A stretch of DNA of 64,000 bases from Mobula hypostoma (taxonomy: Eukaryota). The position numbers were made by a program, and so were the translations under genes. Below are positions 8,260 through 64,000 of the stretch, piece by piece. Where the stretch lies: NCBI RefSeq assembly GCF_963921235.1, contig NC_086106.1, positions 24,986,001 through 25,050,000 of the forward strand. The letters run 5' to 3'. Under the pieces are notes generated by a model. That model saw nothing but the letters and a program-made list of their open reading frames with translations, made no database searches and was not told the DNA's origin. How positions within the stretch are numbered: position 1 is the stretch's first letter; each line of letters opens with the position of its first letter.

Positions 8260-8600
8260 AGCAGTCATGACGGATTGGTGCATCCAAAGGCTGAATGTGA
8301 CATCACACTCTTCCTAGGCTGAGGGAGAGCTTGTCAGCCCATCCGGCGTACATGCCGTCAAGATCAGAGGATAGACTTATTTCCGTCACAAAATATAAAA
8401 ACTGAAACATATTTGAAAACTTGGGGCACTGGTTGCAACATCAAGTAAGAACAAATAACCATTTTTTTTCTCTCTCTCTGAAGAAAAGTGTCTGTTTCAA
8501 GGCAAATGATTCAGACTCATCAATTTATAGGCCATCTCCGTCACACAGGTTGAACAATAGGAAGTCTTGGGCGGGGCTTCCTCACGGTTCAAAGACACGA
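8260..8600 (+). promoter_or_regulatory. Putative NAR-TCR V promoter (CRE/ATF-like decamer, GC box)
   Basis: TGTGACATCA at 8296-8305 (9/10 to the TCR V-beta promoter decamer AGTGACATCA), several TGACG/CGTCA half-sites (~8268, ~8356, ~8384, ~8539), GGGCGGGGC at 8569-8577, all within 500 bp of ATG 8740; conserved in copy B (56243-56252, 56515-56523). Confidence 0.4.
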
Positions 8601-8739
8601 AACAGAATCAAAACCAACAGCTGTCCCTCAATAACCTGTTGTGAACAGTTTACTGTCCAGCTTTGCAGTGCATTCTACCATAACTCTGCAGGGTCTGAGC
8701 TTCATCTCCTCGACACTTCAGCAATATTCCTTGTTGACG

Positions 8740-9209
8740 ATGGGAGTCTTCTTTGTTTTCACACTCTGGCTCTGCTTACGGCGTGAGTACCTTTCACACA
8801 TCCACATTACAGTAACTTTAAATCTGTTTGAGACCTCTGAGCTTCAACCGGCTTAAATTATTCATGTGGTTCGTCTGTGACTGCAATTCACATTTCTCCG
8901 TATTTTTTTTATTCTTAGGTTCATTGAGTCAGTCGGTGACTCAGGACCCGTCCATTGTAAACTTGAATGAGTGTCAGACTGCCACTATCACCTGCAGTTT
9001 CAAGCCTGGCTCTGGTGAATATCGCTTTCTCCCTGGAAAATTCTTCAGGCAGACCAACTCAACGGCCGAACGCAAAGAAGTCACCCGCGGGGGCAGATTT
9101 TTTACTTTGATTAAGAAAACTAACATGCAGTTTACTTTGGCAATTCGGGACCTGCAGGTGGAAGACAGCGGCACCTATTACTGTCAAGCTGTGTACAGAT
9201 GGCGTGAAG
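8740..9209 (+). CDS. NAR-TCR (IgNAR-like) V gene segment, cassette 1: leader exon 8740-8782 + V exon 8919-9209, open frame
   Basis: Leader MGVFFVFTLWLCLR with phase-1 donor C|GTGAGT; acceptor ttcttag|GT. V = SLSQSVTQDPSIVNLNECQTATITC...KFFRQTNSTAERKEVTRGGRFFTLIKKTNMQFTLAIRDLQVEDSGTYYCQAVYRWRE. The short FR2/CDR2 region with GGRF matches the IgNAR V pattern (…ISKGGRY…SFSLRI.DL.VED.GTY.C). Followed directly by an RSS. Confidence 0.9.
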
Positions 9210-9247
9210 CACAATGATGGGCTTCTGCTTCGCGCTGTACAAAAACA
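9210..9247 (+). other. Recombination signal sequence (23-class, 22-bp spacer) of NAR V1
   Basis: CACAATG (9210-9216) + 22 nt + ACAAAAACA (9239-9247). Confidence 0.92.
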
Positions 9248-9583
9248 TTCGCTGTAGCTTATTTCTGATTCAGACGGAGCAGAATGGATCTGCGGGTAAA
9301 CTCATCTTCCTGTCTCTCTGTGGATAGTCCTGCAGTCCAAGTCCTGCAGTCCAGCAAACTGTCAGTTGTTTTATTTTTTTCTGTAGAGTCTTTATGTTCC
9401 CACCTCGCGTGTGAGCAGATATTGTTGCCGACCTGAGGTATGTGTCAATAAATGTCGACAGATGTTGAAAAATACACATTCTTGACGCCGACGGGAGACA
9501 GAATCATTCCTGAACACTTGGAACCAGTAAACGCCAGCGCTGCGAAATTAATTCCTGCTCGACTGTGTCATTGACTCGCCAGC

Positions 9584-9654
9584 AGATTTCAAATTCACGT
9601 AAGGTACTGTGTACAGTTGGAACGAACACAGTGGAAGAGATCTGAACAAAAATA
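9584..9654 (+). other. D segment of cassette 1 (coding 9612-9626, TACAGTTGGAACGAA) flanked by 12-RSSs
   Basis: 3' RSS CACAGTG (9627-9633) + 12 + ACAAAAATA (9646-9654); 5' heptamer TACTGTG (9605-9611) with a weak nonamer AGATTTCAA at 12-bp spacing. All three frames open (YSWNE/TVGT/QLER). Confidence 0.82.
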
Positions 9655-10002
9655 GAAAATAATAAATATATAAATAACTCATTGTTTAAACGAGTTATTC
9701 TCCATATCGCATACAAAAAAATACAAACCTAGCGTTGTTCACGTTCTAATCTGTTTAGATTATTTTTAATTTCCATATTGCATATGTATTTTTGATTGAC
9801 ACGTATGCTGTGTGTTTTTTTCCTTCTCGGAATCGGTGTGCGGTGCGTGTTCCGATTTTATTCTAATTTGGTTTTGCTTTCTCACAAAGAACATATCGAC
9901 CTGCCGGCAAATGGGGAATATTCTTGCTATGTGTTGCATTAACAACTCTGGAAACATTGGGAATCCTATTGTAGCGTTACCTAAGCAGATTCACGTGAGT
10001 GT

Positions 10003-10105
10003 AGTTGTTGTATAGTGGAGACTGAGAACAGGATCATTGTGTATCAATGGGAGACTCATACTCTAGATGGAACAGGGACAAAGGTCACGGTCAGGCCCGG
10101 TAAGT
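10003..10105 (+). CDS. NAR-TCR J segment, cassette 1 (coding 10042-10099) with 5' 23-RSS and splice donor
   Basis: AGTTGTTGT (10003-10011) + 23 + CATTGTG (10035-10041); encodes YQWETHTLDGTGTKVTVRP, ending at phase-1 donor G|GTAAGT (10100). Confidence 0.9.
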
Positions 10106-11122
10106 ATCCACAGACACCGACGATTCCTCAAATATCTCACCCATTTTCACTATCGTTTGATAGATGATCGATTGATTTAAAATCTTGTGTGGTGTGATTC
10201 TGTAAACTGAATCTACACTCACTGCGTCGAAAGGGAAGGTGGTAAACTGAATTAACAGAGTGAGATGGAGAGGGGAATGTCTGCTATAAGTAAAGATGAA
10301 ATGCTGGTGTAATCGTCGCAGAATAAATCCAACCGACTGATGTCAGACTGTGGGAAATACTGTAGGCAGCTTAAGGCATAAACCGCAAGCAGATAAGATA
10401 TATATGTATATATGAAAATGTCACCGACACGCAAGAAATAATGAATCTTGTTTTCTCCAATTTATTTTCAAATAGTACAGTGAGAAGGAGAACCAATTGA
10501 TGAAAAATAAGAAAAGAGAAGGGAAGATAACATTTATATAGCCGCGTGCTAAACTCCAATTGAAAATAATATTCGTCTTCAGTTGCTCAGAAAATTATAC
10601 GACCAATGTGTCCCATTCAGTCTCATTACTGTGAAGAACATGTTACAATGCAAGAGGTTGTAACTTATCGGGGATATGTTATTTAAAAAAACAAGAAGCA
10701 ATTCTGGATGGAGGCTCTATCAATTCGAAAAATAAAACAGGCAAATCCATCATTATTCCGAATGAAACTGGCGTTTAAAATAAACACCGCAGAACTTATA
10801 TATAAAATAAGGCGTTCGGCCCATTTTATGATTGTAGGCCCTCTGCAATTATTCCATGAAATTAGTTCTTCCTTCCACATAGATGTCCAAAATATGAAAC
10901 ATGTTTTGATAATAGAAAGATATCGCTATTTAGCATGAGTCCCTGATTTTATTTCACTGCAGCAATTCAGATAATAATTGACAACGACAATAAATATTGT
11001 TTACTCACATTTCAAATGAAACAAGATTGCGTGAAAGCAAACTCTCCTTAACGTATTTGGGACGTGTTATTTTCCGACAGTTGTCGGTAAATCAGCAATA
11101 ATCTTCCTTTACATTCATACAG

Positions 11123-11425
11123 AATCCATTGCTCCACCGTCTCAGAGTCCGGAACTACAAACTACACTTGCCGATACTGCCATTTTAACCTGTGGATATG
11201 ACGTGAATTGTCGCAACACAATACACTGGTATGTCCAGCTTCCAGGGCAGGGACCCATATTCCTGCTCCAGGGTCAAACTTCCGGATTACAAGATAAGAC
11301 AAAAAATGCCGAGGAACGAATTACTGGTTTTGTCGATCCTGGTAAGAAAATCAGATAGCTGACGATCTACAAAGTGCAACTGGGTGACGCTGCTCTGTAT
11401 TACTGTGCAATGAGTCGGTTTGCAG
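11123..11425 (+). pseudogene. TRDV: Leaderless supporting TCR-delta V, cassette 1, with premature stop
   Basis: Acceptor catacag|AA, in phase with the J donor; (E)SIAPPSQSPELQTTLADTAILTCGYDVNCRNTIHWYVQLPGQGPIFLL…KKIR*LTIYKVQLGDAALYYCAMSRFA; in-frame TAG at 11356-11358 (CAG in copy B). No leader exon found between J and this exon. Confidence 0.85.
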
Positions 11426-11464
11426 CACTGTGATGCCGCGCATGGACAGCGCTGTTCAAGAACT
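11426..11464 (+). other. Proximal 23-RSS of supporting V1
   Basis: CACTGTG (11426-11432) + 23 + TCAAGAACT (11456-11464). Confidence 0.85.
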
Positions 11465-11486
11465 AGGGTGATTCTCGTTACAAGCA

Positions 11487-11525
11487 CACAGTGCTAGGAA
11501 GCAGCGAGGGAACAATACAAAAACT
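11487..11525 (+). other. Second (distal) near-consensus 23-RSS downstream of supporting V1
   Basis: CACAGTG (11487-11493) + 23 + ACAAAAACT (11517-11525); no coding segment or 5' RSS attached. Confidence 0.88.
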
Positions 11526-12139
11526 CATTTAGTTTTATCATGTAAATACACCACAGCAGAGCACGGAGACAAACGGCAAGAAACCGCAGTGTGGTGGGAT
11601 TTTAGTAGAATGATAACAGAGAAAATAGAAGTACCACAAACAACACCCAAAATATACTGGGAGAAATCATTATGTCCTGATGGAAGTTCTTGGTTCGAAA
11701 CATCATTTTCATGGAAGTGACCGGATCTACCGATTCCTCAAATTTCCACTTATAGAAGACACACACATTTCAAGAATATATTCCTGGAGCAGAGAGGCAT
11801 GATTGCCTTAAGGAAATTCGCATTTTAGATCAGAAGTGCGTCAGGCATAGCAACATAAGTGGGCAAATCAGCCTATCCATTGTGGCCCGCCATTCCATTA
11901 TTACTGTTTCCGGTTCCCAATACATTCTCCAGTATATCCATGTGGGACATGCAATCTACCAGCCATTTTGAGTGAAGGAACATCGCAAATCCGTTTGCGC
12001 CGCGTGAACGTCGGCAGAAAAGCAACGGACATTGAAATGTTACAAATTCCAAACAATAAATGCGTAATCTATTGTTTTGGAATTATACGGTATCACCAAC
12101 TACAGGTATCATTACAATTCCAGAAACATATAAACATAG

Positions 12140-12465
12140 AAAACCTACAGCACAATACAGGTCCTTCGGCCCACAAAGTTGTGCCGAGGATGTCGCTACC
12201 TCAGAAATTACTAGGCTTACCTGTAGCCTCTAGTTTTCTAATCTCCATGTACCTATACTAAATTCTCTTAAAATATCCTATCGTATCCGCACCCATCAGC
12301 GTTTCCGGCAGCCCATTCCACAATATCACAACGCTCTTTAAAAAAAAAAAAATCTCACCCTTGACATCTTCTATGTACCTACTCCCGAGCACCTCAAACC
12401 TGTGCACACCTGTGGCAGCCATTTCAGAACTCGGAAGAAGCCTCTGACTATCCACACGATCAATG
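12140..12465 (-). mobile_element. CR1 3' fragment, truncated by a deletion in copy A
   Basis: VDSQRLLPSSEMAATGVHRFEVLG CR1 C-terminal motif; longer in copy B (60045-60500). Confidence 0.75.
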
Positions 12466-19049: not shown

Positions 19050-19895
19050 ATGTCTAAGAACGGGAAAAACGGCAAGGATGGTAAACCTCCGGCTAAACCG
19101 AAAGCTACGGATCTCCCCCCGACTTAATCACCGGTGACTTTGAAAGCGATATAGGAGTTAATTCAGAGGGAAATTTCAACCTCTGTTAGGGAGATGATTC
19201 GTACGGAAATTGCAGGCTCTGTTAAAGACCTGATTCATACGGAAATCTCAACTAATTTCCAGAAAATTGCCGATTTAATTGATAAGATGCAAACATGTAT
19301 TGCGGAACATCAGTCGGCTATATCTGATCTTCAAAAATTCGCGCAACAAAGTGAGCTTAAGATGGGGAAAATCGAAGAAACAATTAATGTAATGAAGAAG
19401 AAACTGGACTTTTTGACTTTTAAAAACTCTGACTTGGAATCTAGAATGCGACGGCAGAATTTACGAATGATTGGCGTGAGGGAAGCTGTTGAAGCCAACA
19501 ACCCCATGAAATATTTCTCTCAACTTTTAAAAGATGCATTCCCTACTGTATTTCCTGACCAACCACCGCTACTGGATCGTGTTCACAGAATCCCATCATA
19601 CTCGTCTAGGTCAGATAGACCTAGGCATGTTATTTTACGTTTTCATTATTTTCAAGACAAGGAGAGACTGTTTCGATTCGCTCGATCTAAAGGTTTCATT
19701 GATTTTTCGGATCTTAAGTTCCGATTCGTGGAAGATTTCAGTAAACCAATCTGGGACCAACGGGTCCGTTACAGATCCGTGATGTCAGAATTCTATAAGA
19801 TGGATTTAAGACCAGCGCTGCTGTACCCTGCACGTCTAAGGATTCGCATGTTAGATGGAGCCCTTCGGTTTTTTGATTCTCCATCGGATGCCTAG
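19050..19895 (+). pseudogene. L1 ORF1p (coiled coil + RRM/CTD) with two early in-frame stops
   Basis: ATG 19050; in-frame TAA 19125-19127 and a downstream TAG; then LESRMRRQNLRMIGVRE…RPRHVILRFH…LLYPARLRI motifs of L1 ORF1. Confidence 0.85.
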
Positions 19896-20654
19896 AGTTA
19901 TCTGGATCAACTTTCATCTTCAACATCTTAATTGCCTTTTTTAAATTATCTCCGTTGATCGGAGGCTGTGAATTGGTTGGTTTTAACTTTTCTGTGCCCT
20001 ATTTGGGCAGAAAAGTTTACTTTTGATTTCTTAATATGGCTGCTAAACTTTCTTTTTAACTGCGTCATTTTTTTTCTATTCCCAGGGGATTCTGGGTGGT
20101 TACTTCCCTTTTGTCATTTTACGTATTTCCTGTGCGGCCTTAAATTTTGTAGTTTTTTTTTAAATTTTATTCTGTTTTGCTTTTTATAATCACTTTATGT
20201 TAATAATCCTATTTTTTTTGTTGCTGTGTCTATTCATGAGTTTGAGGTTTATTGTGGTTTTTTTTTAATATATATTTTCCGGCTTTTGTTCTGTTCTGTG
20301 TGTATTTTAATTGAGCTAACTTTTTTTTTACTTATTTTTTTACTGTTTTACAATTAGCTGATCCTTTTCATATTTATACCTTTTTTTTAGGGAGCGTATA
20401 CCGGAAGTCATGGGGGTAGTTTTAGCGCTTGCTTCTTTCTGGCGGGTCTGCTTTAGATTTTGCCTTGAGGTCTTGGGGTGGGGGGTGGTGGGAGGGGTTT
20501 CACGTTTTAGTTTGTTTCTCTTTGGGCTATATACATTATTAAAGTACTGGTTGCGTCCTTTTCCCCGGTATCTATTGTATGTTCTGTTTCCTCTCCGGGT
20601 TTGTGGGTCGCGCCTATTGTCAATCCTCCTTGTTGTGGGTTGACTTTAGGATTT

Positions 20655-23600
20655 ATGGAGTCTCTTATTAATTTTGTCTCCTGGAATACTAATGGTCTTA
20701 ATCATCCTATTAAAAGGAAAAAAGTTTTTAAAGTGTTCCGGAGACTTAAAGCACAAATTTTATTTTTACAAGAGACCCATGTACGGAGGGGGGACAGACT
20801 ACGTTTTTTCAAATTCTGGAAGGCACAACAATTTCATTCGAACTCCAATGCTAAGATTCGAGGCGTCTCTATTTTTATAGATTCCTCAGTTACTTTTATA
20901 CAACAGGATATTATCTCTGATCCGAATGGTAGATTTTTATTGGTTAGTGGTTTACTATTTAATAAAAATGTAGTTTTGGTTAATGTTTATGCTCCTAATA
21001 TGGATTGTCCGGAATTTTATAAATCATTGTTTGATCAGTTTCCGAATTTGAACGAGTTTTCATTGATTTGGGGCGGAGATCTTAATACCTGTTTATTTCC
21101 AGCTTTGGACCGTTCGGCTCCTTTACGGACTTTACCTAATAAATCTGCAAATTTGATTAATTTTTTCCTTTCTGATTCTGGGTCGACGGACATTTGGCGT
21201 TTTCTGCATCCTCAGGAAAAAGATTTTTCCTTCTTTTCACATGTTCATCATTCCTGTTCAAGAATTGATTATTTTTTCATTGATTCTCGTCTCATTCCTT
21301 CAGTGATTAAATGTGATTATGATTCTATAACCATTTCGGATCATGCTCCACTTAAGCTTTCTATTAAAATTATGGCCAATATACCAAACAATAGACAATG
21401 GCGTTTTAATTCGCTGTTGCTTCAGGACTCGGACTTTGTTAATTTTATGAATGAACAGATTGAGCTTTTTTTTACAATTAACCATACAGAAGATATTTCG
21501 GTTAACACTCTTTGGGACACTTTTAAAGCCTATATTCGGGGTCAGATTATTTCGTATTCCGTTGCTTTGAGGAAGAAACAGAAGCAGGAGGAGATGGCAA
21601 TTGTGGACAAGATTAAAGAAATTGATAAGAAATATGTTATGGCTCCTTCTGAGGAGCTATACAAACAAAGAACTGAACTTCAAATGGAACACAGTTTACT
21701 ACTCTCGTCCTCGATTGTAAACCAATTAAAGAAAACAAGAAGTGATTTTTATGTTCACAGTGATAAAATTGGCAAGCTGCTGGCTAATCAATTGAAATCT
21801 AATTAGGTTAAATCTCAAATCAATCAGATTTATAACCAAATGATCGATTGATATTGGATCATGTGGGGATTAATCAAACCTTTTGTGATTTTTATTCTTC
21901 TTTATATCAATCAGAGTCTCCTCGAGATTCTAAATATATGAATGATTTTTTAGATAAGTTAGACTTCCCTCAGATTTCACAGGATATGTCTTCTTTATTA
22001 GATACTTCCATTACAATGGATGAGATTAAGAATGTTATTTTTTCTATGAATCTGGGGAAAGCTCCTGGCCCTGATGGGTTTACCGTTGAATTTTATAAAT
22101 GTTTTGCTTCTTTATTGATTCCTTGGCTCTATAAGGTTTTTGAGGCTTCTCTGAAACTTGGTAAACTTCCGGAATCTTTTAATAGAGCATCAATTTCTTT
22201 AATACTAAAGAAGGATAAAGAACCTGCTCAATGTGCATCTTATAGACCAATATCTTTATTAAATGTTGATTCTAAAGTTTTTTCTAAGTTATTAGCAAAT
22301 AGACTAGAAAAAGTACTTCCTTCTATTATTTCGGAAGACCAAACGGGTTTTATTAAAGGTCGTTACTCTTTTTATAATATTCGTACATTGTTAAATATCG
22401 TTTATACTCCCTCACAAAATGTTCCTGAGTGTGTTATTTCTTTAGATGCCGAGAAAGCTTTTGATAGAGTAGAATGGCCTTATTTATTTAAGGTGCTTGA
22501 AATGTTTAATTTTAGCTTGAAATTTATATCCTGGATTAAACTGTTATATCACTCCCCTGTAGCCTCGGTTCGTACTAACTCTTTAAACTCACCTTTTTTT
22601 CCTCTCTTTCGTGGTACTCGACAAGGCTGTCCTCTTAGTCCCCTATTATTTGATATTGCATTAGAACCTCTTGCAATTGCTATTCGAGAATCTTCAAATA
22701 TTACTGGGATAACTCGGGGATTAAAGTCCCATAAATTATCACTCTATGCTGATGATTTACTTTTATATATTTCTAATCCTGAGAGATCCATTCCTGCTGT
22801 TTTAGAGTTATTAGCACAATTTGGTCTTTTCTCAGGTTATAAATTAAATCTTAGTAAGAGTGAACTTTTTCCGATTAATAAACATCTTCCCTTATATTAT
22901 AAATTTCCATTTAAATTGATTAATAATTACTTTTCATATCTTGGGATTAAAATTACTTGTAAACATAAAGATTTATTTAAGACTAACTTTTTACCATTAA
23001 TAGACCATATTACTCAACTTTCATCTAAATGGTTTCCCTTATATTTAACTTTGATTGGTCGTATTAATGCAGTTAAGATGTTTTTTTTGCCAAAATTTTT
23101 ATATGTGTTTCAGGCATTGCCAATTTTCGTTCCTAAATCTTTTTTTGATAAAGTTGACTCTAAAATTTCTTCATTTATTTGGCAGAATAAGAATCCGAGA
23201 CTGGGTAAAATACATTTACAGAAAGCTAAGAGAGATGGAGGTTTAGCATTACCTAACTTTAGATTTTATTATTGGGCTATTAATATTCGACATATGAAAT
23301 TTTGGTTACTTGACCGGGACATACTATCTATTCCTAAATGGGTAGCATTGGAATTACAATCTGTTCAGGGTTATACACTTGGTTCTATTTTAGGTTCCTC
23401 TCTTCCTTTTGATTCGAAACGCCTTAAGCAGGTCTCTAACCCGATAGTTAAATATGCTTTGCGCATTTGGTTTCAATTCAGAAAATTTTTTGATCTTAAT
23501 CAATTCGGGTTAGCGATTCCTATTTTAGGTAACATATTTTTTCCTCCCTCTTTTACGGATCGCGCTTTTCAAACTTGGAAGACTAAGGGTATTTTACGGT

Positions 23601-24431
23601 TTTTGGATTTATTTTTAGATGGTTCCCTTATGTCTTTTGAACAATTATCTAATAAATATAACTTATCAAGAATACATTTTTTTAGATATTTACAAGTTAG
23701 AAATTTCCTAAGTACTATACTTTCTTCCTTTCCAATGCTTCCTCCTATATATATTTTAGATTCGATAATTAACCTTAATCCATGTCAGAAAGGTGCATCG
23801 GCTATGATTTATAATATTATTATGAAACTTAGGAAAGCTCCATTTGATAAGATTAGGGTAGATTGGGAACAGGAATTGGGGCTTACCATTTCTGTGGATG
23901 ATTGGGGGCAGATTTTACAATTAGTTAATACTTCCTCTATTTGTGCTAAACATTCCCTAATTCAATTTAAAGTGGTTCATAGAGCACATATGTCCAAAGA
24001 TAAGTTAGCGCGTTTTTTACTCGCATATTAATCCTTTCTGTGATAGATGTTCGGGGCAGATAGCCTCTTTAACTCATATGTTTTGGTCTTGCCCTACTTT
24101 GGAAACTTTTTGGAGAGATATTTTCAATATTATTTCTAAGGTATTAAATATAGATATCTCTCCTCACCCTATTACTGCTATCTTTGGACTACCTAAAATT
24201 TCTAGTAATATTTCCGCTTCAGCCCGTAGAATGATTGCATTTCTTACTTTAATGGCGAAAAGATGTATTTTACAACATTGGAAAGAGCTTAATGCTCCAA
24301 CTACCTTTTTTTGGTTTTCTCAGACGATTTTATGTTTGAATTTGGAGAAAATTAGAAGTAACCTTTATGATTCTTCATTTAAATTTGAACAGATTTGGGG
24401 ACCTTTTATTCGATATTTTCATTTAATGTAA
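20655..24431 (+). pseudogene. L1 ORF2p (endonuclease-reverse transcriptase), 1 stop + 2 frameshifts
   Basis: SWNTNGL…FLQETH…GGDLN…SRIDY…SDHAP endonuclease; KAPGPDG, DAEKAFD, GTRQGCPLSP, LYADD RT; CDRC…HMFWSC zinc knuckle; TAG 21804-21806, frameshifts near 21840 and 24015. Confidence 0.92.
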
Positions 24432-39739: not shown

Positions 39740-40780
39740 TCGCTTCCAAATGGTGTGGCTCTTCAACAAAGACTGTCAGCGACGTGTCGATAACAGACTC
39801 TGACACCTTTTTTTCCGGGCAGGCAGCTGCGATAAATTCCTGAACTTAACCCAATATATTGACGATGACTTTGAAATGCGACAAGTTACAGGAGCAGGAT
39901 CCGTTGACTTACCAGCAGCATGCGACATTGTGAATTACAGAGGCCTTCTACAGACTTTATCTAAAATGTTAAAGAACGAACCCACAGTTAAAATAATAAG
40001 TAGGCTCCTAGAAATTCGTAGATTTTATGTAGAAATGAATGGAATTGAGAGTATGTGGCGTCTACGAAAGCACGGACTACCACAGGGCTCAGTCCTGGCA
40101 CCTTTACTATTTACTGTCTGCACAAATGATCAGCAAACCTTTCCTAACACTGGCAGGTTTATCTATGCAGACGACGTTTGCATAGGAACACAACCAAACA
40201 CCTTCCAAGAAGTTGAAGTACGACTTACAGCAGCCCTCGAAGCAATGAAGCAGTATTATGAAAAAAAAAAGTCTCTGAACCCAAATCCATCAGAAACTCA
40301 AGTGTCTGCATTCCACCTGAGGAATCGAGAAGCAGCTCGGAAACACAAGATCTTCTGGTGTGGGAAGGAGTTTGATCACCATCCGACTCAAATGTACCTG
40401 GGCGTGACACTGAGCAGGACGCTGTCATTTTCCACCGATATCCTAAACCACCGAGGGAAAGTTGCCGCTCGCAATTCACTTTTGAAAAATTAGCAGCACG
40501 AAATGGGGAGCTAATGCTCACACACTTTGATCAACTGCCCCAGCGCTCTGCTATGCACCTGCAGAATACTGCGCACCTGCGTGGGGCAGATCAGCCGATA
40601 CGAAGAAAATAGACCCGTTGATTAACGAAGACGGCCGAATAATCACGGGCGTACTGTACCCACACCCACAAACAATATTTACAGACTTGCAGGCATTGCT
40701 CTCTCAGAGATCGGAAGACACACTACAACAAAAACTTGAAGAGGTAAACAGAACTCGGATCCACTGCATCCAACTACAGC
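39740..40780 (+). mobile_element. Non-LTR retrotransposon RT fragment (Vingi/Ingi-like)
   Basis: GLPQGSVLAPLLFTVCTNDQ…FIYADD…YLGVTLSRTLSF; the clade assignment is from recall of the motif. Confidence 0.6.
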
Positions 40781-55913: not shown

Positions 55914-56685
55914 TATCAATAACAATACTATGTAACCATTGACGTCTGACTAAAACTGTCTTCCACTCAACTTACTGCAAACCGACTGTCTTTTTCGCTG
56001 TCTTTTGCGGCAGTGGGTATCAACTTCATTTTATCCAAAACAGACTTCCAGATTTTCAAAACCCCTGGACACAAACGACAAGACTGACATCGAAGGTGAA
56101 TAGAAGGGAAAGAAGGGTTGCCTGTTTTAAGCCTTTGGTCAAGCACACTCAAATTGAATCTGCTTGGTGACAGATTTCCTCTCATCTATACTTTCTGCGG
56201 AAGAAAAGCAGCCATGACGGATTGGTGCATCCAAAGGCTGAATGTGACATCACACGTTTCCTAGGCTGAGGGAGAGCTTGTCAGCCCATCCGGCGTACAT
56301 GCCGTCAAGATCAGAGGATAGACTTATTTCCGTCACAAAATATAAAAACTGAAACATACTTGAAAACTTGGGGCACTGGTTGCAACATCAAGTAAGAACA
56401 AAAAAACAATTTTTTCTCTCTCTCTGAAGAAAAGTGTCTGTTTCAAGGCAAATGATTCAGACTCATCAATTTATAGGCCATCTCCGTCACACAGGTTGAA
56501 CAATAGGAAGTCTTGGGCGGGGCTTCCTCACGGTTCAAATACACGAAACAGAATCAAAACCAACAGCTGTCCCTCAATAACCTGTTGTGAACAGTTTACT
56601 GTCCAGCTTTGCAGTGCATTCTACCATAACTCTGCAGGGTTTGAGCTTCATCTCCTCGACACTTCAGCAATATTCCTTGTTGACG

Positions 56686-57155
56686 ATGGGAGTCTTCTTT
56701 GTTTTCACACTCTGGCTCTGCTTACGGCGTGAGTACCTTTCACACATCCACATTACAGTTACTTTAAATCTGTTTGAGACCTCTGAGCTTCAACCGGCTT
56801 AAATTATTCATGTGGTTCGTCTGTGACTGCAATTCACATTTCTCCGTATTTTTTTTATTCTTAGGTTCATTGAGTCAGTCGGTGACTCAGGACCCGTCCA
56901 TTGTAAACTTGAATGAGTGTCAGACTGCCACTATCACCTGCAGTTTCAAGCCTGGCTCTGGTGAATATCGCTTTCTCACTGGAAAATTCTTCAGGCAGAC
57001 CAACTCAACGGCCGAACGCAAAGAAGTCACCCGCGGGGGGAGATTTTTTACTTTGATTAAGAAAACTAACATGCAGTTTACTTTGACAATTCGGGACCTG
57101 CAGGTGGAAGACAGCGGCACCTATTACTGTCAAGCTGTGTACAGATGGCGTGAAG
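56686..57155 (+). CDS. NAR-TCR V gene segment, cassette 2: leader 56686-56728 + V exon 56865-57155, open frame
   Basis: Same structure as V1; the V exon differs at only 3 nt (P>T, A>T, one synonymous). Confidence 0.9.
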
Positions 57156-57193
57156 CACAATGATGGGCTTCGGCTTCGCGCTGTACAAAAACA
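57156..57193 (+). other. RSS (22-bp spacer) of NAR V2
   Basis: CACAATG + 22 + ACAAAAACA (57185-57193). Confidence 0.92.
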
Positions 57194-57515
57194 TTCGCTG
57201 TAGCTTATTCCTGATTCAGACGGAGCAGAATGGATCTGCGGGTAAACTCATCTTCCTGTCTCGCTGTGGATAGTCCTGCAGTCCAGCAAACTGTCAGTTG
57301 TTTTATTTTTTTCTGTAGAGTCTTTATGTTCCCACCTCGCGTGTGAGCAGATATTGTTGCCGACCTGAGGTATGTGTCAATAAATGTCGACAGGTGTTGA
57401 AAAATACACATTCTTGACGCCGACGGGAGACAGAATCATTCCTAAACACTTGGAACCAGTAAACGCCAGCGCTGCGAAATTAATTCCTGCTCGACTGTGT
57501 CATTGACTCGCCAGC

Positions 57516-57584
57516 AGATTTCAAATTCACGTAAGGTACTGTGTACAGTGCAACGAACACAGTGAAGAGATCTGAACAAAAATA
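57516..57584 (+). other. D segment of cassette 2 (coding 57544-57557, TACAGTGCAACGAA)
   Basis: 5' TACTGTG (57537-57543); 3' CACAGTG (57558-57564) + 11-nt spacer + ACAAAAATA (57576-57584). Confidence 0.8.
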
Positions 57585-57934
57585 GAAAATAATAAATACA
57601 TAAATAACTCATTGTTTAAACGAGTTATTCTCCATATCGCATACAAAAAAAATACAAACCTAGCGTTGTTCACGTTATAATCTGTTTAGATTATTTTTAA
57701 TTTCCATATTGCATATGTATTTTTGATTGACACGTATGCTGTGTGTCTTTTTTCCTTCTCGGAATCGGTGTGCGGTGCGTGTTTCTATTTTATTCTAATT
57801 TGGTTTTGCTTTCTCACAAAGAACATATCGACCTGCCGACAAATGGGGAATATTCTTGCTATGTGTTGCATTAACAACCCTGGAAACATTGGGAATCCTA
57901 TTGTAGCGTTTCCTAAGCAGATTCACGTGAGTGT

Positions 57935-58037
57935 AGTTGTTGTATTGGGGAGACTGAGAACAGGATCATTGTGTATCAATGGCAGACTCATACTAAAGAT
58001 GGAACAGGGACAAAGGTCACGGTCAGGCCCGGTAAGT
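57935..58037 (+). CDS. NAR-TCR J segment, cassette 2 (coding 57974-58031) with 23-RSS and donor
   Basis: AGTTGTTGT + 23 + CATTGTG (57967-57973); YQWQTHTKDGTGTKVTVRP, G|GTAAGT. Confidence 0.9.
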
Positions 58038-59023
58038 ATCCACAGACACCGACGATTCCTCAAATATCTCACCCATTTTCACTATCGTTTGATAGATGAT
58101 CGATTGATTTAAAATCTTGTGTGGTGTGGTTCTGTAAACTGAATCTACACTCACTGCGTCGAAAGGCAAGGTGGTAAACTGAATTAACAGAGTGAGATGG
58201 AGAGGGGAATTTCTGCTATAAGTAAAGATGAAATGCTGGTGTAATCGTCGCAGAATAAATCCAACCGACTGATGTCAGACTGTGGGAAATACTGTTAGCA
58301 GCTTAAGACATAAACCGCAAGCAGATTAGATATATATACGAAAATGTCACCGACATGCAAGGAATAATGAATCTTGTTTTCTCCAACTTATTTTCAAATA
58401 GTACAGTGAAATGCAGAACCAACTGATGAAAAATAAGAAAAGAGAAGGGAAGAAAACCTTTATATCGCCGCGTGCTAAATTCCAATTGAAAATAATATTA
58501 GCCTTCAGTTGCTTCGAAAATTATCCGACCAATCTGTCCCATTCAGTCTCTTTACTGTGAAGAACATGTTACAATGCAAGAGGCTGTAACTTATCGGGGA
58601 TATATTATTTAAAAAAAAAGAAGCAATTCTGGATGGAACCTCTATCAATTCGAAAAATAAAACAGGCAAATCCATCATTATTCCGAATGAAACTGATGTT
58701 TAAAATAAACACCGCAGAACTTATTTTATGATTGTAGGCCCTCTGCAATTGTTCCATGAATTTAGTTCTTCCTTCCACATAGATGTCCAAAATATGAAAC
58801 ATGTTTTGATAATAGAAAGATATCCGCAATTTAGCATGAGTCCCTGATTTTATTTCACTGCAGCAATTCAGATAATAATTGACAACGACAATAAATATTG
58901 TTTACTCACGTTTCAAATGAAACAAGATTGCGTGAAAGCAAAATCTCCTTAACGTATTTAGGACGTGTTATTTTCTGACAGTTGTCGGTAAATCAGCAAT
59001 AATCTTCCTTTACATTCATACAG

Positions 59024-59326
59024 AATCCATTGCTCCACCGTCTCAGAGTCCGGAACTACAAACTACACTTGCCGATACTGCCATTTTAAACTGTGGATAT
59101 GACGTGAATTGTCGCAACACAATACACTGGTATCGCCAGCTTCCAGGGCAGGCACCCATATTCCTGCTCCAGGGTCAAACTTCCGGAGTACAAGATAAAA
59201 CAAAAAATGCCGGGGAACGAATTACTGGTTTAGTCGATCCTGGTAAGAAAATCAGCCAGCTGACGATCTCCAAAGTGCAACTGGGTGACGCTGCTGTGTA
59301 TTACTGTGCAATGAGTCGGTTTGCAG
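59024..59326 (+). CDS. TRDV: Leaderless supporting TCR-delta V, cassette 2, intact
   Basis: (E)SIAPPSQSPELQTTLADTAILNCGYDVNCRNTIHWYRQLPGQAPIFLLQGQTSGVQDKTKNAGERITGLVDPGKKISQLTISKVQLGDAAVYYCAMSRFA; canonical Cys-Trp-Cys plus a CDR1 Cys; phase-1 acceptor at 59023. Confidence 0.88.
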
Positions 59327-59426
59327 CACTGTGATGCCGCGCATGGACAGCGCTGTTCAAGAACGAGGGTGATTCTCCTTACAAGCACACAGTGCTAGGA
59401 AGCAGCGAGGGAACAACACAAAAACT
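59327..59426 (+). other. Tandem pair of 23-RSSs after supporting V2
   Basis: CACTGTG + 23 + TCAAGAACG (59327-59365) and CACAGTG + 23 + ACAAAAACT (59388-59426). Confidence 0.88.
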
Positions 59427-60865
59427 CATTTGGTTTTATCATATAAATACACCACAGCCGAGCACGGAGACAACGGCAAGAAACCGCAGTGTGGTGGGAT
59501 TTTAGTAGAATGATAACAGAAAAAAAAGTACCACAATCAACACCCAAAATATGCTGGGAGTAATCATAATGTCCTGATGGAAGTACTTGGTTCGAAACAT
59601 CATTTCCATGGAAGTGGCCGGATCTACCGATTCCTTAAATTTCTACTTATCGAAGACACACAACTTTCAAGAATATATTCCTGGAGCAGAGAGGCATGAT
59701 TGCCTTAAGGAATTTCGCATTTTAGATTTTTTTCAGATCAGAAGTGCGTCAGGCATAGCAACAGAAGTGGGCAAATCAGCCTATCCATTGTGGTCCGCTA
59801 TTCCATTATTATTGTTTCCCGTTCCCAATACATTCTCCAGTATATCCATGTGGTACATGCAATCTACCAGCAATTTTGAATGAAGTAACATCGCAAATCC
59901 GTTAGCGCCGCGTGAACGTCGGCAGAAAAGTAACGGACATTGAAATGTTACAAATTCCAAACAATAAATGCGTAATCTATTCTTTTGGAATTATACGGCA
60001 TCACCAACTACAGGTATCATTACGATTCCAGAAACATATAAACATAGAAAACCTGCAGCACAATGCAGGTCCTTCGGCCCACAAAGTTGTGCCGAGGATG
60101 TCGCTACCTCAGAAATTACTCAGCTTACCTGTAGCCTCTATTTTTCTAATCTCCATGTACCTATACTAAATTCTCTTAAAATATCCTATCGTATCCGCAC
60201 CCATCAGCATTTCCGGCAGCCTATTCCACAATATCACCACTCTCTGTGTAAAAAGAAAAAAAAAAAAACTCACCCCTGACATCTTCTATGTACCTGCTCA
60301 CAAGCACCTTAAACCTGTGCACACCTGTGGCAGCCATTTCAGCCCTCCGAAGAAGCCTCTGACTATCCACACGATCAATGCCTCTCATCATCTTATACTC
60401 CTCTATCAGGTCACCTCTCATCCTCCGTCCCTCAAAGGAGCAAACGTCGAGTTCACTCAACCTGTTTTCATCAGCCATATCCACGCCCATGCCCTTATAA
60501 GGAAACTTTAGGGAGCCTGAATGTGTCTTCTTAGGTTGTAAAAGCTTTCACCAGTGAGTTTTAACCTGCAGTTGATGCTGACTGAGATGTGTTCCGTTGC
60601 GTTCAGTTTCTTCCGATAGCATGAATCTCATTAAAATGAAACTGCACGCTTTGGCAATTACATGCTCATCCAATTGAACGGATTGCTATAAGTGGAAGTA
60701 ATCGAGATAACTGGGAGAGGTGCTGCGAAAGAAACATTCGATCGTTAGTTATTATAAGGCAACGTCGTAATTACTCCCACTCATTAGAGATAACCTACGA
60801 TTTGTCATTCCTTGACTTTGCTTTAGTTGCTTTAATTGTTAGACATTGTAGGTTGTCCGATGCTT

Positions 60866-62700
60866 AACCATATAACCATATAACAATTACAATTCGGAAA
60901 CAGGCCATCTCGGCCCTTTTAGTCCTTGCCGAACTCTTACTCTCAACTAGTCCCACCACTTTAAACCACAACATCGAACTTGCTTCCACTACTTCTGCTG
61001 GAACCTCGTCCCACACAGCTACCACTCTCTGAGTAAAGAAGTTCTCCCCCATGTTACCCCAAAACTTTTGTCCGTTAACTCACAACTCATGTCCTCTTGT
61101 TTGAATCTCCCCCACTCTCAATAGAAAAATCCTATCCACGTCAACTCTATCTGTCCGCCTCGTAATTTTAAATACCTCTATCAAGTCCCCCCTCAACCTT
61201 CTACGATTCAAAGAATAAAGACCCACCTAATTCCACCTTTCTCTGTAACATAGGTGATGAAACCCAGGTAACATTCTCGTAAATCTTCTCTGCACTCTCT
61301 CGATTTTGTTGACATCTTTCATATAATTCGGTGACCAGAACTGTACACAATACTCCAAATTTGGCCTCTACCAATGCCTTGTACAATTTCAACATTACGT
61401 CCCAACTCCGATACTCAATGCTCGGATTTATAAAGGCCAGCATACGAAAAGCCTTCTTCACCACCCTATCCACATGAGATTCCACCTTCAGGGATCAATG
61501 CACCATTATTCCTAGATCCCTCTGTTCTACTTCATTCCTCAATGTCCTACCATTTACCATGTGCTTCCTATTTTGATTAGTCCTACCAAAATGTAGCACC
61601 TCACATTTATCAGCATTAAACTCCATCCGCCATCTTTCAGCCCACTCTTCTAACTGGCCTAAATCTCTTTGCAAGCTTTGAAAACCTACTTCATTATCCA
61701 CAACCCAACCTATCTTCGAATCATCTGCATACTTACTCATCCAATTTACCACCACATCATCCAGATCATTAATGTGTATGACAAACAATATTGGAACCAG
61801 TACAGATCCCTAAGGCACACCACTAGTAACTGGCCTCCAATCTCACAAACAGTTATCCACCACTACTCTCTGGTGTCTTCCATCCAGCCACTGTTCAATC
61901 GTTTTTACTACTGTAATATTATTATCTAACGATTCAACAAACCTAACTAACCTTCTGTGTGGAACCTTGTAAACGGCATATAGACAACATACACCGCTTT
62001 GCACTCGTCAACCTTCCTAGTAACATCTTCAAAAAGTTCAATAAGATTTGTCAAACATGACCTTTCACGCACAAATACCAATGAGAACTTGTCCATCCAG
62101 ATAATTATATATACCATCTCGAAGAAAACATACATCAGTTTCCCCACCACTGACGTCAAACTCACAGGCCGACAATTGCGAGGTTTACTCCTAGAACCCT
62201 ATCCACATGAGATTCATTTTTAAACAATGGAACAACATGAACAATATGCCAATCTTTCGGCACTATCCCAGATTCTAATGACATATGAAATACTTCTGTC
62301 AGAACCCCTGCTATTTCCACAAAAACAAAATTTCCTCAGGGTCCGAGGGAATATCTTGCCTGGACCCGGAAACTTATCCAATTTTATATTCCTTAAAAGC
62401 GCCAGTATTTCCTCTTCTTTAATCATTATAGTTACCATAACATCCCTAACTGTTTCCCTTCCCTTGCACAATTCAATATCCTTCTCCTTAGAGAATACCG
62501 AAGAAAATAAATTGTTCAGAATCTCCCCCATCTCTTTTGGCTCCACACATAGCTGTCCACTCCGATTCTCTAAGGGACCAATTTTATCCCTGACTGTCTT
62601 TTTGCTATTAATATAATTGTAGAAACCTTTGGGATTTATGTTCACATTACTTGCCAAAGCAAAATCATATATTCTTTTAGCTTTTCTAATTCATTTCTTA
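60866..62700 (-). mobile_element. CR1 RT fragments (copy B only)
   Basis: INDLDDVVVNWMSKYADDSKIG; RVVKKAFRMLAFI; NPKGFYNYINSKK motifs on the minus strand. Confidence 0.85.
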
Positions 62701-64000
62701 AGTTTCTTTTTCCATTCTTATATTCCTCGATTAGGTTCCGGGAAAAAAAATCAGATGTTAGTGGTTTCTGGGGTTGAGCAGTTCGAAGGGCTGGAGTGGG
62801 TTATTCTGCGCTGCATCATGAAATAAACAACTAAATACACCTTGCAAGGAATCAAAACAACATTTACTCATGAAGACATATGGTACGTAAGTAGGTGCAT
62901 AATCGATTGCCACCCAGACAACAATACTTAATATATTTCATTTTCTCTAGAAACACTCAAATTCCATTTTGACTTTTTTCGCTTCCAAACTGGGAATTTT
63001 AATTTAAACTCAGTGGCCAATTAGAACGTATTTTCGTAAACTGTTGCTTTTTAATAAGATGAGTTGAAAGCGTGTGGAAAGCAGTTTACAATTTATATTG
63101 CAAATACCAACTACTCACCAGTCATTTCGTGGGAAGGAGAATGGAACATCCTGGGAAATAGGTGACATCAGAAGCGAAGTGTTTACATCGATACTCTGCG
63201 ACTCTACAGCTCACATCAGGAATTACAGGAATCAAATAGCAATGAACTGGTCGAACTGGTCGTTAGCTAAGGAAAATATGCTTTCGAACCACAATGAGGA
63301 GCAAGCCTGCAGCCCGTTCTCACGTAGAAGAATCTTATTCTGGGAGAAATATCCCGAAGCCGGCCAAAGCTACTGTGGTGCCAATGAACAGGAAATCGGC
63401 TACTAGCTGCCAAAATAGATGGTTAGTGTTTAATGAGAAGAGGCCGCAGCAGTTTTGAGAAAAAAATCACTTGCCAATAGTTTCACAAAAACAGTGAGAG
63501 ATCAAACCATATGATACTGGTTAGTCCGAGGTTTTTCTGCAGCTATGACCCGTATTCAATTCGCACAGTTGCTTGAAAAGAGATTGCACTTTCTCCCCGG
63601 ACCACCTGGGACTTATGTCGGATGCTCCGGTCTGGTAGTATTTGATAGGCTGATTGGTCGTTCTAAATTATAGCGTGATTAGGTTAGGATTAAATCCGGT
63701 GATTGCCGCGCTGCGTACCTCGATGTGCAGAAAGGGCAAATTCCTCACTGTAGATCCAAACATAAATAAATAATCAATCAAGAAAACACACATAAGTAAA
63801 TAAATAAGAATCAGTTTCCCTTGCAAGTCTTATAGTCGGTACGAAGTCGGCATGAATTTGTATTTTTCAGAAATTTATCCAAAGCTAACGAATGACAAAT
63901 AATTTCAATTCAATGCTAACGCTATTTGTGTTTTTGCAGAAGCGATGAAACTGAATACAATGCATGCCGGGAGCTCCTTCAAAACTGCTTCGATTGGTTA

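What the first reader, a model, noticed from the sequence alone, without database searches (positions are those of the whole stretch)
8740..11525. Complete germline NAR-TCR (double-V, doubly rearranging TCR-delta) cassette, probably in a ray
Seen: leader-V(IgNAR-like)-RSS, D, J with a phase-1 donor, then a leaderless V exon with a phase-1 acceptor and its own 23-RSS, all within 2.8 kb. Known: NAR-TCR of nurse shark (also reported in elephant shark) splices a rearranged IgNAR-like VDJ onto a separately rearranged supporting V-delta-D-J-C-delta. Inference: this is the orthologous system in what is probably a batoid genome, where germline cassette organisation is, to my knowledge, poorly documented.
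Basis: partly seen in the sequence, partly recalled or inferred. Interest (0 to 1): 0.78.

Follow-up and report, generated by a model that had tools for sequence, protein, structure and literature searches.

The report
Ray NAR-TCR cassette, second V dead
This is a genuine germline copy of the known shark-and-ray "NAR-TCR" gene unit (an antibody-like V domain spliced on top of a T-cell-receptor V domain), but the flagged copy has a stop codon in its second V, while an intact twin lies 48 kb downstream; it is one more member of a known kind.

Summary
It is a NAR-TCR cassette.

- **Signature residues:** both V domains carry the published ones. The first V has an a-b loop Cys and no Trp in "WYRK"; the second has a CDR1 Cys.
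- **Relatives:** the closest relatives are two-V gene models of sharks and a sawfish. The ray V is sister to the sawfish V.
- **RNA:** contigs from a public run show leader-V splicing, three different V-(D)-J joints, J spliced onto the second V, and the second V joined to a J-like sequence.

Two corrections.

- **Not complete:** the supporting V has an in-frame TAG at 11356-11358 and six further replacements at family-conserved positions. A 98% identical twin cassette at 56686-59426 is intact.
- **Two 23-RSSs follow the second V:** The single informative RNA contig used the proximal one at 11426.

The scan has already reported many NAR-TCR cassettes elsewhere in this genome, and a 2025 paper maps NARTCR V genes in a stingray. 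This is a new member of a known kind, of low interest.

The parts
8740..8782 (+). Cassette 1: leader exon of the NAR-like V (MGVFFVFTLWLCLR, phase-1 donor GTGAGT)
   Evidence: An RNA contig shows the 8782->8919 GT..AG splice, though that contig is probably from a paralogue.
8919..9209 (+). Cassette 1: IgNAR-like V exon, open. It has an a-b loop Cys (NLNECQ), FFRQ in place of WYRK, and a Cys-Cys span of 63 residues.
9210..9247 (+). RSS of the NAR-like V: CACAATG, 22-nt spacer, ACAAAAACA
9584..9654 (+). D segment. Core TACAGTTGGAACGAA at 9612-9626. The 5' 12-RSS has a good heptamer (TACTGTG) and a weak nonamer. The 3' 12-RSS is CACAGTG-12-ACAAAAATA.
10003..10041 (+). 23-RSS in front of the J (AGTTGTTGT, 23-nt spacer, CATTGTG)
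10042..10099 (+). J segment (YQWETHTLDGTGTKVTVRP plus one base), with donor GTAAGT in phase 1
   Evidence: V-(N/D)-J joints reach 10043-10053, and the J-to-second-V splice appears in RNA contigs.
10100..11122 (+). Intron between the J and the supporting V; no credible leader exon inside it
11123..11425 (+). Cassette 1: leaderless supporting TCR V exon with a CDR1 Cys (DVNCRN). It is a PSEUDOGENE: in-frame TAG at 11356-11358 plus six derived replacements at conserved positions.
11426..11464 (+). Proximal 23-RSS of the supporting V (CACTGTG-23-TCAAGAACT). It abuts the coding end seen in RNA.
11487..11525 (+). Distal, near-consensus 23-RSS (CACAGTG-23-ACAAAAACT), 61 nt behind the proximal one
56686..56728 (+). 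Cassette 2: leader exon, identical to that of cassette 1
56865..57155 (+). Cassette 2: IgNAR-like V exon, open, differing from cassette 1 at 2 residues. Its RSS is at 57156-57193.
57516..57584 (+). Cassette 2: D (14-nt core, 57544-57557) with flanking RSSs; the 3' spacer is 11 nt
57935..58031 (+). Cassette 2: J 23-RSS and J segment (YQWQTHTKDGTGTKVTVRP) with a phase-1 donor
59024..59326 (+). Cassette 2: supporting V exon, intact (CAG where cassette 1 has TAG). It has the family-consensus residue at 7 of the 10 residues where the copies differ.
   Evidence: RNA contigs over the 3' half carry this copy's letters.
59327..59426 (+). Cassette 2: proximal and distal 23-RSSs (59327-59365 and 59388-59426)

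Best explanation
The window holds two tandem germline NAR-TCR cassettes, 47.9 kb apart and about 98% identical. They belong to a larger array in a batoid genome.

**How each unit works**
1. A leader plus an IgNAR-like V (23-RSS), one D (12-RSS on both sides) and one J (23-RSS) are joined by RAG in T cells.
2. The J exon then splices, in phase 1, onto a leaderless supporting TCR V.
3. The supporting V separately rearranges through its own 23-RSS to D/J segments elsewhere in the locus.
4. The product is a TCR chain with two V domains.

**What is shown here:** the anatomy, the family signatures, somatic V-(D)-J joints, both splices, and a supporting-V-to-J join in RNA of this cassette family.

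**What is inferred:** that the constant region is C-delta, that the distal V binds antigen unpaired, and that the two extra cysteines bridge the domains.

**The flagged copy:** cassette 1 has a dead supporting V (a stop codon plus decay at conserved residues), so it cannot make a full chain by the normal route. Cassette 2 looks functional.
For: - **Anatomy and frames:**
- **Duplication:**
- **First V:** its best single-domain PDB matches are VNARs, E 4e-12 to 1e-8, aligned almost without gaps. Its Cys-Cys span is 63 residues against 71 in the second V.
- **Signature residues:** those listed in PMC1845163 are present and are conserved across 11 shark and sawfish homologues.
- **Two-V homologues:** gene models from Pristis, Heterodontus, Scyliorhinus, Cetorhinus, Mustelus, Rhincodon, Hemiscyllium and Chiloscyllium match both domains in the same order. 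The Mustelus model ends in a region whose nine best PDB matches are all TCR-delta constant chains, E about 1e-10.
- **Tree:** the first-domain and second-domain clades are each supported 100/100, and the ray first V is sister to the sawfish one at 96/95.
- **Germline loci elsewhere:** sawfish and epaulette shark have the same V(22/23)-D(11/12)-J(23)-V(23) layout, phase-1 donors and phase-1 acceptors.
- **RNA contigs of run X1:**
  - splice 8782->8919;
  - three distinct V-J joints, two of them with 15 and 25 inserted letters;
  - splice 10099->11123;
  - one contig that ends the second V at 11425 and continues in frame into a J-like sequence.
- **Pseudogene call:** TAG where copy 2 has CAG. 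At G63, V91, S77, A43, S82 and R37, copy 2 keeps the family consensus and copy 1 does not.
Against: - **Origin of the RNA contigs:** none can be assigned to cassette 1. Those covering the 3' half of the second V carry cassette-2-type letters, and others look like further paralogues.
- **Run X1:** it is only guessed to be RNA. The intron-free joints are what argue for RNA.
- **Constant region:** no constant region and no TCR D/J lie in the window. The J-like tail in RNA could be a J-alpha rather than a D-delta/J-delta join.
- **The TAG:** it rests on one assembly and was not checked against reads.
- **D segment:** its 5' nonamer is weak, and D use in the joints is not clearly traceable.
- **Tree content:** no named IgNAR V or conventional shark V-delta sequences could be included.
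Confidence: 0.9

Rival explanations
1. Cassette 1 is functional after all: the TAG at 11356-11358 is an assembly or sequencing error, or one allele only.
For: The contig covering 11122-11232 matches cassette 1 exactly, including its letter at 11189.
Against: - The stop comes with an adjacent change (AGA TAG against AGC CAG).
- Six more replacements sit at positions that are invariant or nearly so in 11 homologues, and all six are derived in copy 1. That pattern means decay, not a one-base error.
- RNA contigs over the stop region carry copy-2-type letters.
Confidence: 0.08
2. The first V-D-J is an IgNAR antibody cluster (or a relic of one) that merely lies beside an ordinary TCR V gene.
For: The first V is most like VNAR domains among solved structures.
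Against: - There is one D, not three.
- The J donor is followed by a V exon, not by constant exons.
- tblastn with the two V domains found no further Ig domain in the window, and Pfam scans of the long ORFs found only LINE proteins.
- The a-b loop Cys and the missing Trp are NAR-TCR marks, not IgNAR marks.
- The second V has no leader.
- An RNA contig joins J to the second V.
- The first V is 45-55% identical to the first domains of shark two-V models, with HMMER scores of 85-127 bits, against 36-50 bits for single-domain VNARs in the PDB.
Confidence: 0.01
3. Cassette 1 is still used despite its dead supporting V: its intact NAR V-D-J is transcribed and its J splices across about 49 kb onto the supporting V of cassette 2, or the NAR V joins D-delta directly.
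For: - The NAR V, D, J and their RSSs in cassette 1 are intact and differ from cassette 2 at only 2 residues.
- An unrearranged supporting V has no donor, so it cannot be an internal exon.
- The first half of the cassette is more alike between the copies (about 1% divergence) than the second half (about 4%).
Against: The low divergence of the first half can equally come from gene conversion, or from too little time for decay.
Confidence: 0.07

Closest known systems
NAR-TCR (NAR-TcR) of nurse shark and elephant shark (Criscitiello, Saltis and Flajnik 2006, as cited and summarised in PMC1845163, PMC3457774 and PMC6795676)
   Same: - Leader plus an IgNAR-like V with its own D and J.
- J spliced to a leaderless supporting TCR V that rearranges separately.
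- a-b loop Cys and no canonical Trp in the first V.
- CDR1 Cys in the second V.
   Different: - It is a batoid copy, only 45-55% identical to shark sequences.
- The junction codon is Glu, not Asp.
- The flagged copy has a pseudogenised supporting V.
- Linkage to the constant region is not shown here.
Gnomon two-V gene models of sawfish (XP_051882926, Pristis pectinata) and epaulette shark (XP_060678048), with their germline loci L001 and L002
   Same: They share the same order, the same RSS spacer pattern (V 22/23, D 11/12, J 23, second V 23), and the same phase-1 donor and acceptor. One or more further 23-RSSs follow the second V at a period of about 61 nt.
   Different: - The shark has three signals in the row.
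- The second signal in the sawfish is decayed.
- In the ray the distal signal is the better one.
- None of the database names recognises these as NAR-TCR.
IgNAR heavy-chain clusters
   Same: The V domain is of the same short, single-domain type: its best PDB matches are VNARs and its Cys-Cys span is 63 residues.
   Different: There is one D instead of three, no constant exons, a different pattern of extra cysteines, no Trp, and the J splices to a V.
TCR-mu of marsupials and monotremes
   Same: It is a three-domain TCR chain with a diversified distal V on a supporting V (PMC3457774).
   Different: TCR-mu is regarded as convergent. Its distal V is VH-related, and the marsupial supporting V is germline-joined.

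Membership tests
NAR-TCR | The N-terminal V is of the IgNAR type (short, no C'' strand) | tested here: met
   The best single-domain PDB matches are VNARs (E 4e-12 and weaker), aligned almost without gaps. The Cys-Cys span is 63 residues against 71 in the second V.
NAR-TCR | The first V has a typical leader peptide | tested here: met
   The leader exon 8740-8782 is hydrophobic and has a GTGAGT donor. The splice is seen in an RNA contig.
NAR-TCR | Cys in the a-b loop of the first V, and no canonical Trp in the WYRK motif (PMC1845163) | tested here: met
   The ray reads NLNECQ and FFRQ. Both features are conserved in 11 shark and sawfish homologues.
NAR-TCR | The first V has its own D and J and rearranges somatically | tested here: met
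   RSSs of compatible spacing: V 22/23, D 12 and 12, J 23. Three different V-(N/D)-J joints appear in contigs. The contigs come from this cassette family and are not provably from cassette 1.
NAR-TCR | The J exon splices to a supporting V that lacks a leader | tested here: met
   Phase-1 donor and phase-1 acceptor. A contig shows joint 10099->11123. No credible leader exon lies in the intron.
NAR-TCR | The supporting V has a conserved Cys in CDR1 (PMC1845163) | tested here: met
   The ray's DVNCRN aligns with YSGxCxYT of the homologues.
NAR-TCR | The supporting V is an open, usable gene segment | tested here: not met
   Cassette 1 has TAG at 11356-11358 plus six derived replacements at conserved positions. 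Cassette 2 (59024-59326) is open. So the flagged copy is a crippled member and the twin is a full member.
NAR-TCR | The supporting V rearranges to TCR-delta D/J and is expressed with C-delta | tested here: inconclusive
   One contig joins the V end (11425) in frame to a J-like sequence that is not in the window. The constant region was not seen. In the homologous Mustelus model the constant part best matches TCR-delta C.
NAR-TCR | Lies in the TCR alpha/delta locus | not tested
   This is known only from earlier scan notes, which place TCR-delta D-J blocks and other cassettes on the same piece of sequence. I did not check it.
IgNAR cluster | V, three D segments and a J, followed by IgNAR constant exons | tested here: not met
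   There is one D. tblastn with the two V domains found no other Ig domain in the 64 kb. Pfam scans of the long ORFs between the cassettes found only LINE proteins. The J splices to a V.

The most novel reading that the evidence does not exclude
The row of 23-RSSs spaced about 61 nt apart behind the supporting V is a conserved working device and not debris. The ray has two, the sawfish has one good and one decayed, and the epaulette shark has three. A first join made at a distal signal is out of frame or stopped, but it leaves the proximal signal intact. The supporting V could then rearrange a second time to a downstream D or J. That would rescue a cell that has already invested in a productive NAR V-D-J.
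Probability: 0.15. Interest if true: 0.55.

Novelty: new member of a known kind. Interest (0 to 1): 0.25.

Why it matters
It adds a checked pair of germline NAR-TCR cassettes from a ray to a system known since 2006. The pair consists of one decaying copy and one intact copy. It shows that the layout, the RSS spacer logic and the signature cysteines are shared by ray, sawfish and sharks. The practical lessons are that an apparently complete cassette can hide a dead supporting V, and that database names for the shark and sawfish homologues ("kappa light chain-like", "uncharacterized") miss the family. The one less familiar feature is the repeated RSS behind the supporting V. It is shared across elasmobranchs and could be tested for a role in secondary rearrangement.

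Tried and rejected
- **Word-indexed protein search, first V:** nothing found. Its relatives are 240-700 aa gene models, outside the tool's length window, so the blank means nothing. The exhaustive search found them.
- **PDB search, second V:** the top of the list is multi-domain antibody constructs, so it does not discriminate TCR from light-chain V. The word-indexed search gave bird TCR-alpha V genes (names TVA/TVAZ2) at 33-42% identity.
- **NCBIfam:** no hits, as expected for a library of bacterial and archaeal proteins.
- **Papers not held:** the 2006 NAR-TcR paper and the 2021 review by Ott et al.. The defining features were taken from papers that summarise them.
- **Missing tree sequences:** no named IgNAR V or conventional shark V-delta sequences could be obtained as tool references. 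The tree therefore separates first domains from second domains but does not test NAR-TCR V against IgNAR V directly.
- **Runs X2 and X3:** nothing was laid on the stretch.
- **J-like tail:** the tail of the rearranged supporting V is not in the window.
- **Selection test:** between the copies, the supporting V has 11 changes that alter the codon's meaning and 1 silent change. By my own rough estimate this does not differ significantly from the neutral expectation, so no claim of selection is made.
- **IgNAR-cluster reading:** rejected; see the rival explanations.
Full report
**Observation**

I read 8400-11900 and fixed the coordinates by script.

| Part | Coordinates | Notes |
|---|---|---|
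| Leader exon | 8740-8782 | Hydrophobic, ends in phase 1 at GTGAGT |
| First V exon | 8919-9209 | Behind an AG acceptor; open |
| First V RSS | 9210-9247 | CACAATG, 22-nt spacer, ACAAAAACA |
| D core | 9612-9626 | 15 nt; TACTGTG on its 5' side, with a weak nonamer 12 nt away; CACAGTG-12-ACAAAAATA on its 3' side |
| J RSS | 10003-10041 | 23-nt spacer |
| J | 10042-10099 | Reads ...DGTGTKVTVRP; ends in phase 1 at GTAAGT |
| Second V exon | 11123-11425 | Behind CATACAG; continues the frame, junction codon GAA |

A heptamer/nonamer scan of both strands of the whole window gave eight hits. All eight belong to this cassette or its twin, so the signals are not chance.

**The twin cassette**

The window holds two copies of a block, about 47.9 kb apart and about 98% identical. 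The second cassette runs from 56686 to 59426. Between the two cassettes lie an L1-type LINE and other repeats. tblastn with the two V domains found no further Ig or TCR segment there.

**Corrections to the observation**

*The flagged cassette is not complete.*
- Codon 78 of its second V is TAG (11356-11358), where the twin has CAG.
- This does not look like a lone base error. The second V domains of the two copies differ at ten residues.
- I aligned both copies with eleven shark and sawfish homologues.
- At G63 (11 of 11), V91 (11 of 11), S77 (10 of 11), A43 and S82 (9 of 11 each) and R37 (6 of 11), the twin keeps the family residue and the flagged copy does not.
- The supporting V of cassette 1 is therefore a decaying pseudogene.
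- Its first V, D and J are still intact, two residues away from the twin.

*Two 23-RSSs follow the second V.*
- CACTGTG-23-TCAAGAACT abuts the coding end at 11426.
- A near-consensus CACAGTG-23-ACAAAAACT lies 61 nt further on, at 11487-11525.

**What it is**

- **First V.** It is a V-set domain. Its best single-domain matches among solved structures are shark VNARs (E 4e-12 to 1e-8), aligned almost without gaps. Its Cys-Cys span is 63 residues against 71 in the second V, which is the short IgNAR-type format.
- **Published marks.** The elephant-shark genome paper lists the marks that separate NAR-TCR domains from IgNAR V and from ordinary V-delta (PMC1845163). The first V has a leader, a Cys in the a-b loop and no Trp in "WYRK". 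The associated V-delta has no leader and has a Cys in CDR1.
- **All marks are met.** The ray reads NLNECQ and FFRQ in the first V and DVNCRN in the second. A scan of the J-to-second-V intron finds no credible leader exon, although the same scan recovers the true leader of the first V.

**Relatives**

- An exhaustive HMMER search with the first V found full-length matches only in cartilaginous fish: Pristis, Heterodontus, Scyliorhinus, Cetorhinus, Mustelus, Rhincodon, Hemiscyllium and Chiloscyllium.
- These are automatic gene models with uninformative names. Each carries a first domain 41-55% identical to the ray first V, then a J-like stretch, then a second domain 45-57% identical to the ray second V.
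- The 385-residue Mustelus model continues into a constant and membrane region. Its nine best PDB matches are all TCR-delta constant chains (E about 1e-10), well ahead of the next matches.
- In a maximum-likelihood tree, the first domains and the second domains form separate clades, each at 100/100. The ray first V is sister to the sawfish one (96/95), and the ray second V sits beside the sawfish second domain. This fits a batoid origin. Earlier scan notes name a devil ray, which I did not test.
- I fetched the germline loci of the sawfish and epaulette-shark models. They show the same order, the same spacer pattern (V 22, D 11 or 12, J 23, second V 23), and phase-1 donors and acceptors.

**Expression**

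One public run (X1) is stored as contigs and is only guessed to be RNA. It gave twelve contigs on 8600-11700. They show:
- the leader-to-V splice (8782->8919, GT..AG);
- three different joints from the end of the first V (9202-9206) to the J (10043-10053), two of them with 15 and 25 inserted letters;
- the J-to-second-V splice (10099->11123, GT..AG), on one 215-nt contig that also carries a V-J joint;
- a contig that ends the second V exactly at 11425 and runs on in frame into a J-like sequence (...EIYNTKETKL) that is not in the window.

Intron-free joints with canonical splice ends argue that the run is RNA. The variety of joints argues for somatic rearrangement. The end at 11425 argues that the proximal RSS was used.

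The contigs cannot be assigned to cassette 1.
- Those over the 3' half of the second V carry the twin's letters at 11252, 11287, 11312, 11369 and 11395.
- The counts of differing letters fit CC at 11355-6, meaning no stop.
- The 5' contig has 12 differences in its untranslated part and is probably from another paralogue.
- Runs X2 and X3 gave nothing.

**Mechanism**

Shown:
- the two-step architecture;
- RSS spacers that keep the two rearrangements apart (the D has a 12-RSS on both sides and lies between a V and a J that both carry a 23-RSS, and the second V carries its own 23-RSS);
- somatic joints;
- both splices.

Inferred from the literature:
- the chain uses C-delta and pairs with TCR-gamma;
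- the distal V binds antigen unpaired;
- the a-b loop Cys and the CDR1 Cys form an interdomain bridge.

Cassette 1 cannot make a full chain by this route. Cassette 2 can.

**Known or new**

- NAR-TCR has been known since 2006 and is regarded as ancestral to all cartilaginous fish.
- A 2025 paper maps NARTCR V genes in the TCR alpha/delta region of three sharks and a stingray.
- The scan itself has already reported many such cassettes on the same piece of this genome, from 3.7 Mb before to 2.0 Mb beyond this window. Neighbours lie 30.8 kb before the window and 36.6 and 98 kb beyond it.
- This is therefore a new member of a known kind.
- The only less familiar feature is the repeated RSS behind the supporting V. 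Other notes already flagged it. I confirm that it recurs at a 60-61 nt period in the epaulette shark (three signals) and, in decayed form, in the sawfish.

**Limits**

- Neither C-delta nor the D/J partners were located.
- No authentic IgNAR V or conventional V-delta sequences were available for the tree.

Noticed in passing
window 11426-11525 and 59327-59426; L002 8080-8240; L001 9502-9600: 23-RSSs recur at a period of 60-61 nt behind the supporting V. The ray has two, and the distal one is the better. The epaulette shark has three. The sawfish has one good and one decayed. Use of the distal signal would leave an in-frame TGA in the coding end.
   Followed up: partly
window 8700-11560 against 56646-59470: Divergence between the two copies is uneven. 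It is about 1% across leader, first V and D, and about 4% across J, intron and second V. This suggests either gene conversion of the first half or a mosaic history.
   Followed up: partly
window 57558-57584 and 57544-57557: The D of cassette 2 has an 11-nt 3' spacer and a 14-nt core, against 12 and 15 in cassette 1. Both copies have a weak 5' nonamer (AGATTTCAA).
   Followed up: no
window 19194-24031 (+) and 39876-40493 (+): An L1-type LINE lies between the cassettes, with an ORF1 RNA-binding domain, an endonuclease and a reverse transcriptase in long open frames. A second reverse-transcriptase fragment is also present.
   Followed up: partly
window about 60030-63419: Cassette-2 block carries about 3 kb extra relative to 12122-12463 of the first block. 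The stretch has a strongly C-rich skew and is probably a transposon insertion.
   Followed up: no
L001 3313-3543 (-): In the sawfish locus, a conventional TCR-type V with a 23-RSS lies in the opposite orientation about 2.6 kb upstream of the NAR-like V.
   Followed up: no
window 10311-10524: One contig of run X1 lies inside the J-to-second-V intron at about 96% identity. It may be an unspliced transcript of a paralogue or a repeat.
   Followed up: no
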